A DNA stretch of 64,000 nt from Chlorokybus atmophyticus (lineage: Eukaryota; Plantae; Mesostigma and Chlorokybus algae): contig RHPI01002990.1 in assembly GCA_009103225.1 (NCBI GenBank), positions 312,223 to 376,222 on the forward strand, given 5' to 3'. Made by a program: the position numbers and the translations under genes. Positions 36,009 to 38,639 of this stretch are shown piece by piece. Positions within the stretch are counted from its first letter, which is position 1. Each line of letters opens with the position of its first letter. The notes under the pieces were generated by a model. The model saw nothing but the letters and a program-made list of their open reading frames with translations, was not told where the DNA came from and did not search any database.

Positions 36009-38639
36009 TCAACTAATTGTCATCGCTTGAGCTCCACCCGAGACTGCTTGGTCGGGCCGCAGGAACGCATCTACCAAGACGGGGTTCACCCTGACAGCCT
36101 GCTTGAACTCCTCAAAAGACACGCTGTTATCATGATCAAGATCCATGCTGTCAAATAGAGCATTGATTGCCGCCGCATCATACAGCGCACATGTCAACCG
36201 ATCATCTGCCATGGCGTGCAGCATTGAAGACAACTCTTCTCTGGAAATGACGCCCGAACCATCTTGATCATAAACATCGAATACAAACTTCAGCGCATCG
36301 TCGTGCTCGGTTTTGCGCAGCGTCGCCAGCCCGCAGACAAATTCACGGAAGTCGAGCGAACCATCCCCATTCTGATCAAACAGTTTGAATACTCTGGGCA
36401 GCACTGTTGCGTCTCCGGGCCGCAGGGCAAAAATTGCACGCATAACCTGCAATCATAGTGCATTAGCTTTACCTCAAGTTGATGCGACTTGCATGCACCC
36501 TTAAGTGTGCATCAACTAGGCAGCGTGTGGTTGGTGGTGTCGTGCACACACTCACTTGCTCAAACTGTGCCTGTGTTACACGGTTGGTGCTGTTCTTGCT
36601 GGTAACACGCTGAAAATGGTTCTGCAACTGCCTGAGCTCTTCTGTTGAGACGCCTGTGGTCCCAACCAGGTCTCTCAGATTGGACCGGATGTTGAGAGAA
36701 GCTCCGGCCAGCACCGCGAAACCAACGCTGCGGAATTTCTTCTTAGCATTCAACTTGCTAATGCGCTCCCGCACATCCGGATAGAGTGGTTGCGAGCTGG
36801 CAAGTTCTCCAGTCACCCACGGGTGTGCCAGTACTGCAGGCGCTGCTGGTCTGAGGTGTGGGTCTTTTTGCAACAAAGATCGTACCTGCACAAGCATGCA
36901 CAGACCGTTGTTCCCTACTACATAGTCTCTGATTCAGACCCTCTCCTGCGAAACCAAACGCACCAGCTCCTTGGCAGAGTCCGAGACACCATGCCAGGCA
37001 GGGTCATCAAATGTGTAAGCTGCATTCAATATCAGGTGCTGTTTGGCCTGCCAACCAACCAACCAACAAGCAGCATAAACCCTCAAACCCACAGTAACGG
37101 CAATGCTGCACGCCTTAAACAACCACACACACTTGCAACAGGTCCTCTGCTGCCACAGACTCTCCTAACTCCATGTGCATGCAATCACCTGAGGCGTCGA
37201 GGCATAGAAAGGAGGAAAGCCACTCAACAAAATGTACAGGATGACACCCAACGACCAGAGATCCCCAGCATCAGTGCCCTGTACAAAAGTACCAGATGAA
37301 CTGGGGGGTCAAGCAAGCGCGTTGCGTGCGACTGGACCCATGTGCTGAATGTTCAACAATACCTGCTGTCCAGCCAAGGCTTCTGGGGCAATGTAGTCCA
37401 ACGAGCCAAACAGACCAACTAGACGGTCGGCACGACCAGCCATATGACTTAAACCAAAGTCCATAATCTTGAGGACTGAGTTCTGCGAGGCAACAAGTTC
37501 AAGGCTCGTACGTCAACACAGCCAAAGTGCTGTGTGAGACAATGCCATACACACCTCATCTTTTGTCAAAAAAAGCAAGTTTTCGGGTTTTAGGTCGCGA
37601 TGCTGGATGCCAACTCTATGCAACGCTTCGAGCCCCGAAGCAATCTGTGAACCAATCATATCAATGCAATTGCCGGGCCCTAACCCCCACGATTATGTCA
37701 CCAGGGAGTTGTTGGTCACATCAACAGAAGTCAAATCATTACCTGGCGCACAATTCCAGCAGCAGCTTCCTCTGAGTAATGCCCTTTTTGTATTATTCGC
37801 TCAAACAGCTCACCACCCTGAAGCAAAAACAGCAACGAGATCGGCCTAGTGCAACAGTAGCGCACACTGAAGGCTATAAGCGCTATGCTACGCACCTGGC
37901 ATAGCTCCATCACAAGGTGGACGTAATGCTTGTCAACAAACACATTGAGCAGACGGATGAGGTTCGGATGGTGCGGAACGGTGTCAAGGATGCGCGCCAT
38001 GACGCTGATCTCGTTCTCCACCATTTGCTGGTCTCCACTGTACCTTCCCTTCTTGGAAAGGGTCTTTACCGCGACATACTGCTGCCATTGCCACATTCAT
38101 CAGTGTCATACTTCATCAGTTGTTCAAGTTTGAAAGGTGCAGTGCAGGTCAACGTTCCATGTTTCTTGCATACCGGAATGTCTAACATCTTGCGAGCTGG
38201 CAGTTCTTGTAGCATACAAGACAGCAGCTGTCTAGTATGCTGTTTTATCTGGCAGCATGCAAGCAATGCATAGTCTGCTCACCTCAACCGTCTTACACAA
38301 TTCCAACATCCACAGCAAACAGTCAAAAGTACAGACGAAGCATTGTAGAAGATAGGCATGCCTGTATTGCTATGGGCAAACAGAGAAAGTTTGCAAACTT
38401 ACGCACATGCAACCCGGACGGATCAACCCAACACCCACACTCACTGGCTGATCAGCAATTCTGCACGAACAATGCAAGCGACGGAGCAAATGAACCAAGC
38501 GAGCTGTTACCTCAACAACGTTATTCTGCTGTCCTGGAACAGGCCGCCGCTTGGCGGACCTGACAGTGGAAAAGCCCCCCTGGCCAAGCACGCGCAGCAG
38601 CTCATAGCGGTCCGTCAGCTGTTCCCCCAGGCCCGCCAT
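36009..38639 (-). CDS. CCaMK: Calcium/calmodulin-dependent protein kinase, CCaMK (DMI3-type)
   Basis: Kinase motifs [31 protein letters not shown] and [14 protein letters not shown] (a CCaMK-type activation segment). Junction helix [12 protein letters not shown]. Visinin-like domain with three EF-hands ([36 protein letters not shown]), rather than the four found in CDPKs. Confidence 0.88.

What the first reader, a model, noticed from the sequence alone, without database searches (positions are those of the whole stretch)
36700..36999. CCaMK naturally lacking the legume autoregulatory residues (Thr271 to Ala; Trp342/Ser343/Ser344 to Ala/Gly/Ala)
[27 protein letters not shown] aligns without gaps to the recalled legume KQQMI.NGNFSFYEKTWKGI.QSAK.L, placing Ala (codon 36997-36999) at Mt Thr271 / Lj Thr265. 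Substituting this Thr deregulates the kinase and causes spontaneous nodulation (established). [18 protein letters not shown] aligns to FNARRKLRAAAIASVWSS, so the CaM-site Trp and inhibitory Ser343/Ser344 are also absent, while three EF-hands remain. This may be a pre-symbiotic regulatory state. Algal CCaMKs as such are already known.
Basis: partly seen in the sequence, partly recalled or inferred. Interest (0 to 1): 0.72.

Follow-up and report, generated by a model that had tools for sequence, protein, structure and literature searches.

The report
Chlorokybus CCaMK-like kinase without regulatory phosphosites
An early-branching relative of land plants, the alga Chlorokybus, expresses a calcium/calmodulin-type kinase of the family that later became the plant symbiosis decoder CCaMK, and it naturally lacks the three phosphorylation sites that regulate the legume enzyme, apparently because those sites were added later in evolution.

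Summary
A nine-exon minus-strand gene (38639-36009) encodes 513 aa identical to the annotated Chlorokybus atmophyticus protein Chrsp2S04671 (P0057). Spliced transcript contigs from four runs confirm all eight introns.

It has an intact Ser/Thr kinase domain, a CaMKII/CCaMK-type autoinhibitory and calmodulin-binding helix, and three canonical EF-hands. Ala247 (GCC 36999-36997) sits at Medicago Thr271. Ala318, Gly319 and Ala320 (36708-36700) sit at Trp342, Ser343 and Ser344.

Context changes the reading:
- Thr/Ser at site 271 is present in 147 of 147 embryophyte-type CCaMKs, but in none of Chlorokybus, Mesostigma, chlorophyte Pyramimonas or the non-green relatives. The Chlorokybus state is therefore ancestral, not a loss.
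- Trp342 occurs in only 58 of 147 plant CCaMKs, so it does not define the family.
- The protein lies outside the 100/100-supported core CCaMK clade (Chara, Zygnematophyceae, embryophytes). A sister position is not rejected (AU p = 0.21).
- None of its eight phase-0 introns matches the six introns (phases 2-0-0-2-0-0) conserved from Closterium to Selaginella.

Best reading: a constrained, expressed pro-orthologue of CCaMK that keeps the pre-phosphosite regulatory state. Whether it is deregulated is untested. Homologues in charophytes, including Mesostigma, were already reported; I found no report of the residue pattern. Moderate interest.

The parts
36009..38639 (-). Whole coding region of the CCaMK-like kinase gene (nine exons, eight phase-0 GT..AG introns; 513 aa, identical to P0057 = Chlorokybus atmophyticus Chrsp2S04671)
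   Evidence: Exon borders were read from the sequence. All nine exon translations were found consecutively in P0057. All eight introns are skipped in spliced contigs of four runs.
38511..38639 (-). Exon 1 (aa 1-43): start codon and Gly-rich loop GQGGFS
37896..38081 (-). Exon 2 (aa 44-105): VAVK lysine and helix C Glu. Transcripts start this exon at 38078 (NAGNAG acceptor), dropping Gln44.
   Evidence: Pfam Pkinase. Joint 38078|38511 in all four runs.
37743..37817 (-). Exon 3 (aa 106-130)
37555..37644 (-). Exon 4 (aa 131-160) with the catalytic loop HRDLKPEN (37602-37579)
   Evidence: Pfam Pkinase
37363..37482 (-). Exon 5 (aa 161-200) with DFG (37461-37453) and the APE activation segment
37189..37278 (-). 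Exon 6 (aa 201-230); Ser219 (37224-37222) corresponds to Lj Ser237
36964..37047 (-). Exon 7 (aa 231-258) carrying [16 protein letters not shown]
36997..36999 (-). Codon GCC = Ala247, at the position of Mt Thr271 / Lj Thr265. The preceding Pro246 (37002-37000) is at Lj Lys264.
   Evidence: Alignment is anchored by the invariant Trp248. The codon is unchanged in transcript contigs X1 and X2.
36556..36885 (-). Exon 8 (aa 259-368): end of the kinase domain, regulatory helix, low-confidence linker and degenerate first EF-like helix pair
36700..36780 (-). Predicted autoinhibitory / calmodulin-binding helix, aa 294-320 ([27 protein letters not shown]). Asp295 corresponds to Lj Glu313, Arg299 to Lj Arg317, Leu303-Asn304 to Lj Phe321-Asn322.
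   Evidence: AlphaFold2 helix 294-319. Alignment to the FNARRKFRAA motif of CCaMKs, and the CaMKI match reaches residue 313. Net charge is +4, as in Lotus.
36700..36708 (-). Codons for Ala318, Gly319 and Ala320, at the positions of Mt Trp342, Ser343 and Ser344
   Evidence: Robust to either placement of the single one-residue gap.
36009..36446 (-). Exon 9 (aa 369-513 plus stop): visinin-like domain with three EF-hands
   Evidence: Pfam EF-hand_1 with three stretches and EF-hand_7
36342..36377 (-). EF-hand loop 1, [12 protein letters not shown] (aa 392-403)
36234..36269 (-). EF-hand loop 2, [12 protein letters not shown] (aa 428-439)
36108..36143 (-). EF-hand loop 3, [12 protein letters not shown] (aa 470-481)

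Best explanation
The stretch belongs to an expressed, selectively constrained Chlorokybus gene for a Ca2+-regulated Ser/Thr kinase of the CCaMK family. It has a catalytically intact kinase domain, a CaMKII/CCaMK-type basic-hydrophobic regulatory helix and a visinin-like domain with three canonical EF-hands.

It is most likely the pro-orthologue of land-plant CCaMK/DMI3, on the Chlorokybus + Mesostigma branch that split off before the core CCaMK clade formed. It keeps the ancestral, non-phosphorylatable residues (Ala247; Gly319/Ala320) where core CCaMKs later acquired the autophosphorylation brake (Mt Thr271) and the calmodulin gate (Mt Ser343/344).

Inferred mechanism:
- The helix at 294-320 holds the kinase off.
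- Ca2+ acts through the protein's own EF-hands and, probably, through Ca2+/calmodulin binding to that helix, which releases the kinase as in CaMKI/II and CCaMK.
- The two phosphorylation-dependent feedback layers of the legume enzyme are missing.

Shown here: gene model, expression, domain content, the residues, their distribution across relatives, tree position and intron structure. Inferred only: calmodulin binding, autoinhibition, and any lack of a brake.
For: Gene model and expression:
- The exon translations are identical to P0057.
- All introns are removed in contigs of four runs from two studies.
- 31 of the 38 listed coding differences among related strains are synonymous. Those inside DDPAW and the regulatory helix are all synonymous.

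Domains: Pkinase at E = 1.8e-64 plus three EF-hands. All catalytic motifs are present. Helix 294-319 is predicted.

Family:
- An exon 8 search of 1.84 billion representatives finds only CCaMK-type proteins at the top.
- Mesostigma is the nearest relative (53-54% identity), followed by streptophyte CCaMKs.
- No second Chlorokybus or Mesostigma protein of core type, and no streptophyte protein of Chlorokybus type, appeared in the best 120 hits of two searches. This is the complementary distribution expected of orthologues.

Ancestral state: site 271 is Thr/Ser in 147 of 147 embryophyte-type proteins, but Ala, Val, Ile, Leu or His in all 14 non-core relatives. Site 343 is Ser in all core algae and Ser/Thr in 140 of 147 plants, but only one non-core relative (P0041, Thr) has Ser/Thr there.

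Tree: streptophyte monophyly costs only 1.3 lnL units, AU p = 0.21.

Published context: a 2017 study placed a Mesostigma protein in the CCaMK (B5) group (PMC5482843). W342A binds calmodulin normally (PMC5696362). Marchantia paleacea CCaMK, which is functional in symbiosis (PMC11725925), also has Leu at the Lj Phe321 position.
Against: - The ML tree does not place it as sister of the core clade. Chlorokybus + Mesostigma join the Pyramimonas group with weak support (42/73), and the backbone is effectively a polytomy.
- None of the eight introns is shared with the six-intron structure conserved from Closterium to Selaginella.
- At columns that separate core CCaMKs from the non-streptophyte relatives, Chlorokybus carries the outgroup state more often than the core state (15 against 10 of 34).
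- The calmodulin-binding segment is the most divergent in the alignment ([12 protein letters not shown] against FNARRKFRAAA[YF]).
- AlphaFold2 confidence falls below 50 from residue 313.
- No biochemical data exist.
Confidence: 0.68

Rival explanations
1. Paralogue, not pro-orthologue. The Chlorokybus and Mesostigma genes belong to an older green-algal CCaMK-like subfamily shared with chlorophytes such as Pyramimonas. True CCaMK arose by duplication or strong divergence in the ancestor of Chara, Zygnematophyceae and embryophytes. On this reading the missing residues say nothing about the history of CCaMK regulation.
For: - The ML topology groups Chlorokybus + Mesostigma with the Pyramimonas/jgi11 group.
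- The core clade has 100/100 support with a stem of 0.70 substitutions per site.
- No intron position is shared.
- Signature columns lean towards the outgroup state.
Against: - Support for that grouping is weak (42/73; 85 SH-aLRT in the quick tree).
- Holding the streptophytes together is not rejected (AU p = 0.21).
- No genome in the searches shows both types.
- A published tree put the Mesostigma protein in the CCaMK group (PMC5482843).
- Even under paralogy, the outgroup pattern still makes absence of the phosphosites the older state of the family.
Confidence: 0.25
2. CDPK-like intramolecular switch. The regulatory helix is bound by the protein's own Ca2+-loaded EF-hand domain rather than by free calmodulin. 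The enzyme would then be a Ca2+-only kinase, and sites that gate calmodulin binding are irrelevant to it.
For: - The best full-length structural matches are apicomplexan CDPK1 structures (Foldseek E about 1e-25, TM about 0.5), and the best sequence match among solved structures is a CDPK3.
- The calmodulin-binding segment is divergent and lacks the anchors Phe321 and Trp336 (Lj numbering).
Against: - The junction is of the CaMKII/CCaMK type (xNA[KR][KR]KFR), not the CDPK junction, and CaMKI aligns through residue 313.
- There are three, not four, EF-hands, with a long low-confidence linker (313-337) between helix and EF domain.
- The exon 8 search found few clear CDPKs: the one CDPK-like hit checked, P0051, ranked 51st of 55.
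- Net charge and the hydrophobic pattern are kept.
Confidence: 0.2
3. Secondary loss. The ancestor of all streptophyte CCaMKs had the Thr and Ser sites, and Chlorokybus lost them, giving a derived and possibly relaxed or degenerating kinase.
For: Chlorokybus has the longer terminal branch (1.12 against 0.65 for Mesostigma). Two core-clade algal transcripts also lack Thr (Ala in P0058, Cys in P0061), so losses do happen.
Against: - Mesostigma, five Pyramimonas-type proteins and the seven other non-core relatives all lack Thr/Ser at site 271, and all but one (P0041, Thr) lack it at site 343.
- The gene is expressed and under purifying selection.
- All catalytic and Ca2+-binding motifs are intact.
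Confidence: 0.05
4. Artefact: a wrong gene model, a sequencing error or a mis-alignment creates the apparent substitutions.
For: The annotated model differs from the transcripts by one codon at intron 1.
Against: - Independent transcript contigs reproduce the exons and the codons.
- The Ala is adjacent to an invariant Trp with no gaps.
- Either gap placement leaves Mt343/344 without Ser/Thr.
Confidence: 0.01

Closest known systems
Legume CCaMK (Medicago truncatula DMI3, Lotus japonicus CCaMK; P0161)
   Same: - Same three-part architecture and almost the same length (513 against 518 aa), with about 43% identity.
- Same CaMKII-like junction, with the invariant Asn and the basic cluster.
- Arg299 corresponds to Lj Arg317 and Ser219 to Lj Ser237.
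- Three EF-hands in a visinin-like domain.
   Different: - Ala for Thr271, Pro for Lys270, Asp for Glu319, Leu for Phe327, and Ala/Gly/Ala for Trp342/Ser343/Ser344 (Mt numbering).
- Lies outside the 100/100 core clade.
- Eight phase-0 introns, against six introns with phases 2-0-0-2-0-0 at different positions.
- The partner CYCLOPS and any symbiotic role are unknown in this alga.
Mesostigma viride Mv07707 (P0010), reported as the earliest CCaMK (B5 CFK) in PMC5482843
   Same: Nearest relative, with 53-54% identity over the full length. Same architecture, the same DDPxW motif (Val at site 271) and Gly at site 343. The two group together (71/72).
   Different: Mesostigma keeps the canonical FNARRKFR and a Ser at site 344. 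It carries more core-type signature residues (3 of 7 against 0 of 7).
Pyramimonas (Chlorophyta) CCaMK-like kinases (P0027, P0076, P0120, P0173)
   Same: Same architecture and length (about 500 aa). Non-phosphorylatable residue (Ile) at site 271 and Met/Ala at sites 343/344. About 45% identity to Chlorokybus overall and 35% over the C-terminal half.
   Different: They are chlorophyte proteins and form their own 100/99 clade with metagenomic relatives.
Animal CaMKI / CaMKII
   Same: The kinase domain plus regulatory helix align through residue 313 (E = 1e-68 to CaMKI-D). The Pro two residues before the Trp (DSPxW type) and the FNARRKL-type calmodulin-binding segment are recalled from established knowledge of the CaMKII sequence, not tested here.
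   Different: No fused EF-hand domain in the animal enzymes and no association domain here. The regulatory phosphosites of CaMKII (Thr286, Thr305/306) have no counterpart tested here.
Apicomplexan and plant CDPKs
   Same: Kinase fused to a C-terminal EF-hand domain. Best full-length structural analogues and best hit among solved structures (CDPK3 9vhu, E = 2.5e-75).
   Different: CDPKs have four EF-hands and a different junction. The CDPK-like protein P0051 is a very distant outgroup in the tree.

Membership tests
CCaMK (DMI3-type Ca2+ and Ca2+/calmodulin-dependent kinase) | Catalytically competent Ser/Thr kinase domain of the CaMK group | tested here: met
   Pfam Pkinase E = 1.8e-64 over residues 12-282. 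[21 protein letters not shown] and APE are all present.
CCaMK (DMI3-type Ca2+ and Ca2+/calmodulin-dependent kinase) | Overlapping autoinhibitory / calmodulin-binding segment of the FNARRK[FL]RAAA type directly after the kinase domain | tested here: met
   [15 protein letters not shown] aligns without gaps. Asn304 and Phe309 are conserved, Arg310 and Ala315 match nearly invariant columns, and Arg299 corresponds to Lj Arg317. Net charge is +4, and helix 294-319 is predicted. The segment is divergent (Leu for Phe321). Calmodulin binding itself was not tested.
CCaMK (DMI3-type Ca2+ and Ca2+/calmodulin-dependent kinase) | Visinin-like C-terminal domain with three (not four) functional EF-hands | tested here: met
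   Three EF-hand_1 stretches in exon 9 with canonical 12-residue loops.
CCaMK (DMI3-type Ca2+ and Ca2+/calmodulin-dependent kinase) | Autophosphorylatable Thr/Ser before the conserved Trp (Mt Thr271 / Lj Thr265) | tested here: not met
   Ala247. Thr in 139 and Ser in 8 of 147 embryophyte-type CCaMKs.
CCaMK (DMI3-type Ca2+ and Ca2+/calmodulin-dependent kinase) | Ser/Thr pair at the end of the calmodulin-binding segment (Mt Ser343/Ser344) | tested here: not met
   Gly319/Ala320, or Ala318/Gly319 with the other gap placement. Ser/Thr occurs in 140 and 139 of 147 plant CCaMKs, and Ser at site 343 in all core-clade algae.
CCaMK (DMI3-type Ca2+ and Ca2+/calmodulin-dependent kinase) | Phylogenetic placement in the CCaMK clade | tested here: inconclusive
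   Excluded from the core clade (100/100, 20 rows). A sister position to it is not rejected (difference 1.30 lnL units, AU p = 0.21).
CCaMK (DMI3-type Ca2+ and Ca2+/calmodulin-dependent kinase) | Conserved gene structure: six introns, phases 2-0-0-2-0-0 (PMC4672059) | tested here: not met
   Closterium, Marchantia paleacea and Selaginella share all six positions. Chlorokybus has eight phase-0 introns, and none falls at those positions.
CCaMK (DMI3-type Ca2+ and Ca2+/calmodulin-dependent kinase) | Dual regulation by free Ca2+ and Ca2+/calmodulin; binding and phosphorylation of CYCLOPS/IPD3 | not testable with these tools
This needs biochemistry, and CYCLOPS could not be searched for outside the 64-kb window.
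CDPK | Calmodulin-like domain with four EF-hands joined to the kinase by a CDPK-type junction | tested here: not met
   There are three EF-hands and a CaMKII-type junction. The CDPK-like protein P0051 is the distant outgroup.

The most novel reading that the evidence does not exclude
The autophosphorylation brake (Thr271) and the calmodulin gate (Ser343/344) were added to a much older green-lineage Ca2+/calmodulin kinase in the common ancestor of Chara, Zygnematophyceae and land plants. That same stem shows a burst of sequence change and the fixation of the 2-0-0-2-0-0 intron structure.

On this reading the Chlorokybus enzyme is a living example of the unbraked ancestor. Put into a legume or Marchantia ccamk mutant, it would behave like the gain-of-function T271A/T265I alleles.
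Probability: 0.2. Interest if true: 0.65.

Novelty: new variant of a known kind. Interest (0 to 1): 0.42.

Why it matters
CCaMK decodes the nuclear calcium spiking that admits mycorrhizal fungi and rhizobia, and its Thr271 and Ser343/344 phosphosites make it a gated decoder rather than a simple Ca2+ switch.

The comparison made here dates those sites. They are absent from Chlorokybus, Mesostigma, chlorophyte and non-green homologues. Ser343 is present in every core-clade sequence examined, and Thr/Ser271 in most of them.

This gives a concrete evolutionary hypothesis: the regulatory layers were acquired before land plants but after the earliest streptophyte split. It also supplies natural proteins with which to test what each layer contributes.

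The result is not a new kind of system, and the gene is already in a public annotation.

Tried and rejected
- Exon-by-exon Pfam scan. Exons 1, 3 and 7 are too short to score, and exon 8 has no Pfam family.
- Spliced model. Once P0057 proved identical to the nine exon translations, full-length work used that database reference. Exons were concatenated only inside scripts, for codon bookkeeping.
- Representative search with exon 8 alone. It found the family but not the window's own protein.
- Word-index search with the C-terminal half of the Pyramimonas protein. It returned only five proteins, so the range of the family in chlorophytes remains poorly sampled.
- Search with P0061. It added no new streptophyte algae.
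- ESM Atlas look-alikes. They gave only generic kinase + EF-hand clusters.
- Hydrophobic-moment test of the calmodulin-binding segment. It did not discriminate: legume CCaMK itself scores no better than shuffles.
- Origin of the core-clade transcripts P0058, P0061 and P0062. It could not be established, so the order in which Thr271 appeared within the core clade is open.
- Delaux et al. 2015 (PNAS). It is not held in the library, so its content is known here only through citing papers (PMC4873514, PMC6232258, PMC11725925).
- First tree with kinase-only outgroups. It showed long-branch joins and was replaced by a cleaner 33-row set. Left out of the final tree: P0025, P0034, P0050, P0005 and some redundant plant and Closterium/Spirogloea rows.
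- Strict signature-column count. It gave only seven columns, too few to decide.
- Strains X3 and X4. Read laying listed only 40 of 88 differences, so the Ala codon in these strains is not verified.
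Full report
WHAT IS THERE

The flagged 300 bases lie in exons 7 and 8 of a minus-strand gene. Reading the minus strand gives nine exons joined by eight GT..AG introns, all in phase 0:
- 38639-38511
- 38081-37896
- 37817-37743
- 37644-37555
- 37482-37363
- 37278-37189
- 37047-36964
- 36885-36556
- 36446-36009 (stop included)

The nine exon translations occur consecutively, without any change, in protein P0057 (513 aa). This is the public annotation jgi/Chlat1 Chrsp2S04671 of Chlorokybus atmophyticus. 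Exons were searched one by one. Exons were concatenated only inside scripts, to map codons.

EXPRESSION AND CONSTRAINT

Contigs from four public runs of two studies, all labelled with the same organism, were laid on 35950-38700 (2,751 letters). They skip every one of the eight introns at the predicted borders.
- X1 is identical to the window.
- X2 differs at five places.
- X3 and X4 are 95-99% and 90-95% alike, and are evidently other strains or cryptic species.

At intron 1 all four use the acceptor three bases downstream (the exon starts at 38078, not 38081). The real mRNA therefore lacks Gln44 of the annotated model.

Of the 38 coding differences the tool listed, 31 are synonymous and 7 are not. 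Inside the DDPAW motif and the regulatory helix only synonymous changes were listed. The tool did not show 48 further differences, so the Ala codon is verified in X1 and X2 only. The gene is transcribed, correctly spliced and under purifying selection.

THE OBSERVATION

It holds. Ala247 (GCC, 36999-36997) stands directly before the invariant Trp248, at the position of Lotus Thr265 / Medicago Thr271. No gap occurs nearby in either of two alignments.

Ala318, Gly319 and Ala320 (36708-36700) stand at Medicago Trp342, Ser343 and Ser344. Chlorokybus is one residue shorter between the KKKFR and LRDLVG anchors. Moving the gap to the other side puts Leu317, Ala318 and Gly319 there, so neither placement gives a Ser or Thr at 343/344. 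The nearest Ser (Ser321) falls at Lj 339 or 340.

The other members of the legume hydrogen-bond network described in PMC4672059 map as follows:

| Lotus residue | Chlorokybus residue |
|---|---|
| Ser237 | Ser219 |
| Lys264 | Pro246 |
| Glu313 | Asp295 |
| Arg317 | Arg299 |

The calmodulin-contact pair Phe321-Asn322 is Leu303-Asn304.

DOMAINS

- Pfam finds a full kinase domain (E = 1.8e-64) and three EF-hands.
- The Gly-rich loop, [15 protein letters not shown] and APE are intact.
- The three EF loops are canonical.
- AlphaFold2 with a 39-sequence alignment (mean pLDDT 80.6) predicts a confident kinase domain, a long helix at 294-319 over the regulatory segment, a low-confidence linker at 313-337, and a helical EF-hand domain.
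- The best solved relatives by sequence are a CDPK3 and CaMKI-D. CaMKI-D aligns through residue 313, that is, into the regulatory helix.
- The best full-length fold matches are apicomplexan CDPK1 structures.
- No plant CCaMK was among the 60 best solved-structure matches.

RELATIVES AND STATE OF THE REGULATORY SITES

Exon 8 alone, searched against 1.84 billion representatives, found 55 proteins. The best are CCaMK-type. The nearest full-length relative is Mesostigma viride Mv07707 (53-54% identity), followed by CCaMKs of Closterium, Spirogloea, liverworts, hornworts and the rest of the land plants.

Outside the streptophytes the same architecture occurs in the chlorophyte Pyramimonas. It also occurs in several proteins of unknown, partly non-green-looking origin (P0011, P0127, P0017, P0041, P0012, P0037).

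Across 170 aligned proteins:

| Site | 147 embryophyte-type CCaMKs | Core-clade algae | Chlorokybus, Mesostigma, Pyramimonas and other non-core relatives |
|---|---|---|---|
| Mt271 | Thr 139, Ser 8 | Thr (Closterium, Spirogloea); Ser, Ala, Cys in three transcripts of unknown species | Ala, Val, Ile, Leu or His |
| Mt343 | Ser/Thr 140 | Ser in all, including Chara | No Ser/Thr, except Thr in one non-green relative (P0041) |
| Mt342 | Trp 58, Leu 68 | Val; Ala in Chara | Varied (Ala, Ile, Cys and others; Trp only in P0012) |

The Medicago W342A mutant binds calmodulin like wild type (PMC5696362). So the absence of Thr271 and Ser343 is the older state of the family. The sites appear with the core clade. 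The missing Trp carries no weight.

IS IT A CCaMK?

A careful ML tree (33 rows, LG+C20 PMSF) recovers a core CCaMK clade of Chara, Zygnematophyceae and embryophytes. Support is 100/100 and the stem is 0.70 substitutions per site.

Chlorokybus and Mesostigma pair weakly (71/72) and lie outside that clade. Their attachment to the Pyramimonas group has no real support (42/73), and the backbone is a polytomy. Forcing all streptophyte sequences together costs 1.30 log-likelihood units (AU p = 0.21). The species-tree-like arrangement, and with it orthology, is therefore compatible with the data but not demonstrated.

Neither search showed a second gene type in any one lineage. This is what orthology predicts. 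PMC5482843 had already placed a Mesostigma protein in the CCaMK (B5) group.

Against close kinship stand two results:
- The CCaMK genes of Closterium, Marchantia paleacea and Selaginella share all six introns (phases 2-0-0-2-0-0, as published for land plants in PMC4672059). None of the eight Chlorokybus introns falls at those positions.
- At columns that separate core CCaMKs from the non-streptophyte relatives, Chlorokybus more often has the outgroup residue (15 against 10 of 34).

I therefore call it a CCaMK-family pro-orthologue rather than a CCaMK.

HOW IT PROBABLY WORKS

Shown: an intact kinase, a CaMKII/CCaMK-type basic-hydrophobic helix after it, and three Ca2+-competent EF-hands.

Inferred:
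- The helix autoinhibits the kinase.
- Ca2+ acts through the EF-hand domain and through Ca2+/calmodulin binding to the helix.
- The two phosphorylation-dependent layers of the legume enzyme do not exist here. These are Thr271 stabilising the off state through the hydrogen-bond network, and Ser343/344 blocking calmodulin.

Whether this makes the enzyme 'deregulated' cannot be deduced, because the residues around Ala247 differ too (Pro246, Asp295) and animal CaMKs autoinhibit without such a Thr. The main mechanistic rival is a CDPK-like switch in which the protein's own EF-hand domain, not free calmodulin, binds the helix.

NOVELTY

[quoted passage not shown] 2015. I could not read that paper. 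It is known here only through PMC4873514, PMC6232258 and PMC11725925. A Mesostigma member was reported in 2017 (PMC5482843), and the Chlorokybus protein is in a public annotation.

In seven full-text searches I found no statement that the regulatory phosphosites are absent from the earliest-branching streptophyte homologues, or that they arose on the stem of the core clade. The finding is a natural variant of a known kinase type with a testable evolutionary reading. It is of moderate interest to people working on the origin of symbiosis signalling, and ordinary otherwise.

Noticed in passing
window 38078-38084 (acceptor of intron 1): NAGNAG acceptor. All four transcript contigs join 38511 to 38078, while the public model P0057 starts exon 2 at 38081. 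The mRNA seen therefore encodes 512 aa without Gln44.
   Followed up: partly
L004 (Closterium), L005 (Marchantia paleacea), L006 (Selaginella): The six-intron, phase 2-0-0-2-0-0 structure published for land-plant CCaMK genes is already present, at identical alignment columns, in a zygnematophyte alga. The structure is therefore older than land plants.
   Followed up: yes
P0058, P0061, P0062 (transcripts; L001-L003): Three core-clade algal CCaMK transcripts of unidentified species carry Ala, Cys and Ser at the Thr271 position while keeping Ser at 343. The Thr is therefore not universal even among core-clade algae. Their organisms could not be determined.
   Followed up: partly
P0059: A CCaMK filed under the amoeba Leptophrys vorax in EukProt groups tightly with Closterium (100/100). 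It is most likely prey RNA in the amoeba's transcriptome.
   Followed up: partly
P0027, P0076, P0120, P0173: Pyramimonas (Chlorophyta) has full-length kinases with the CCaMK architecture. This qualifies the published statement that CCaMK is absent from green algae (PMC4672059), which rested on six other algal genomes.
   Followed up: partly
window 39917-39999: Perfect (GT)41 microsatellite about 1.3 kb upstream of the start codon. A CGTG-type repeat lies at 40925-40968 and a 15-bp GC-rich repeat at 38891-38927.
   Followed up: no
P0056 (Mesostigma Mv07707-RA.2): A second annotated isoform of the Mesostigma gene has only kinase Pfam hits and no EF-hands. It may be an alternative transcript or a model error.
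   Followed up: no
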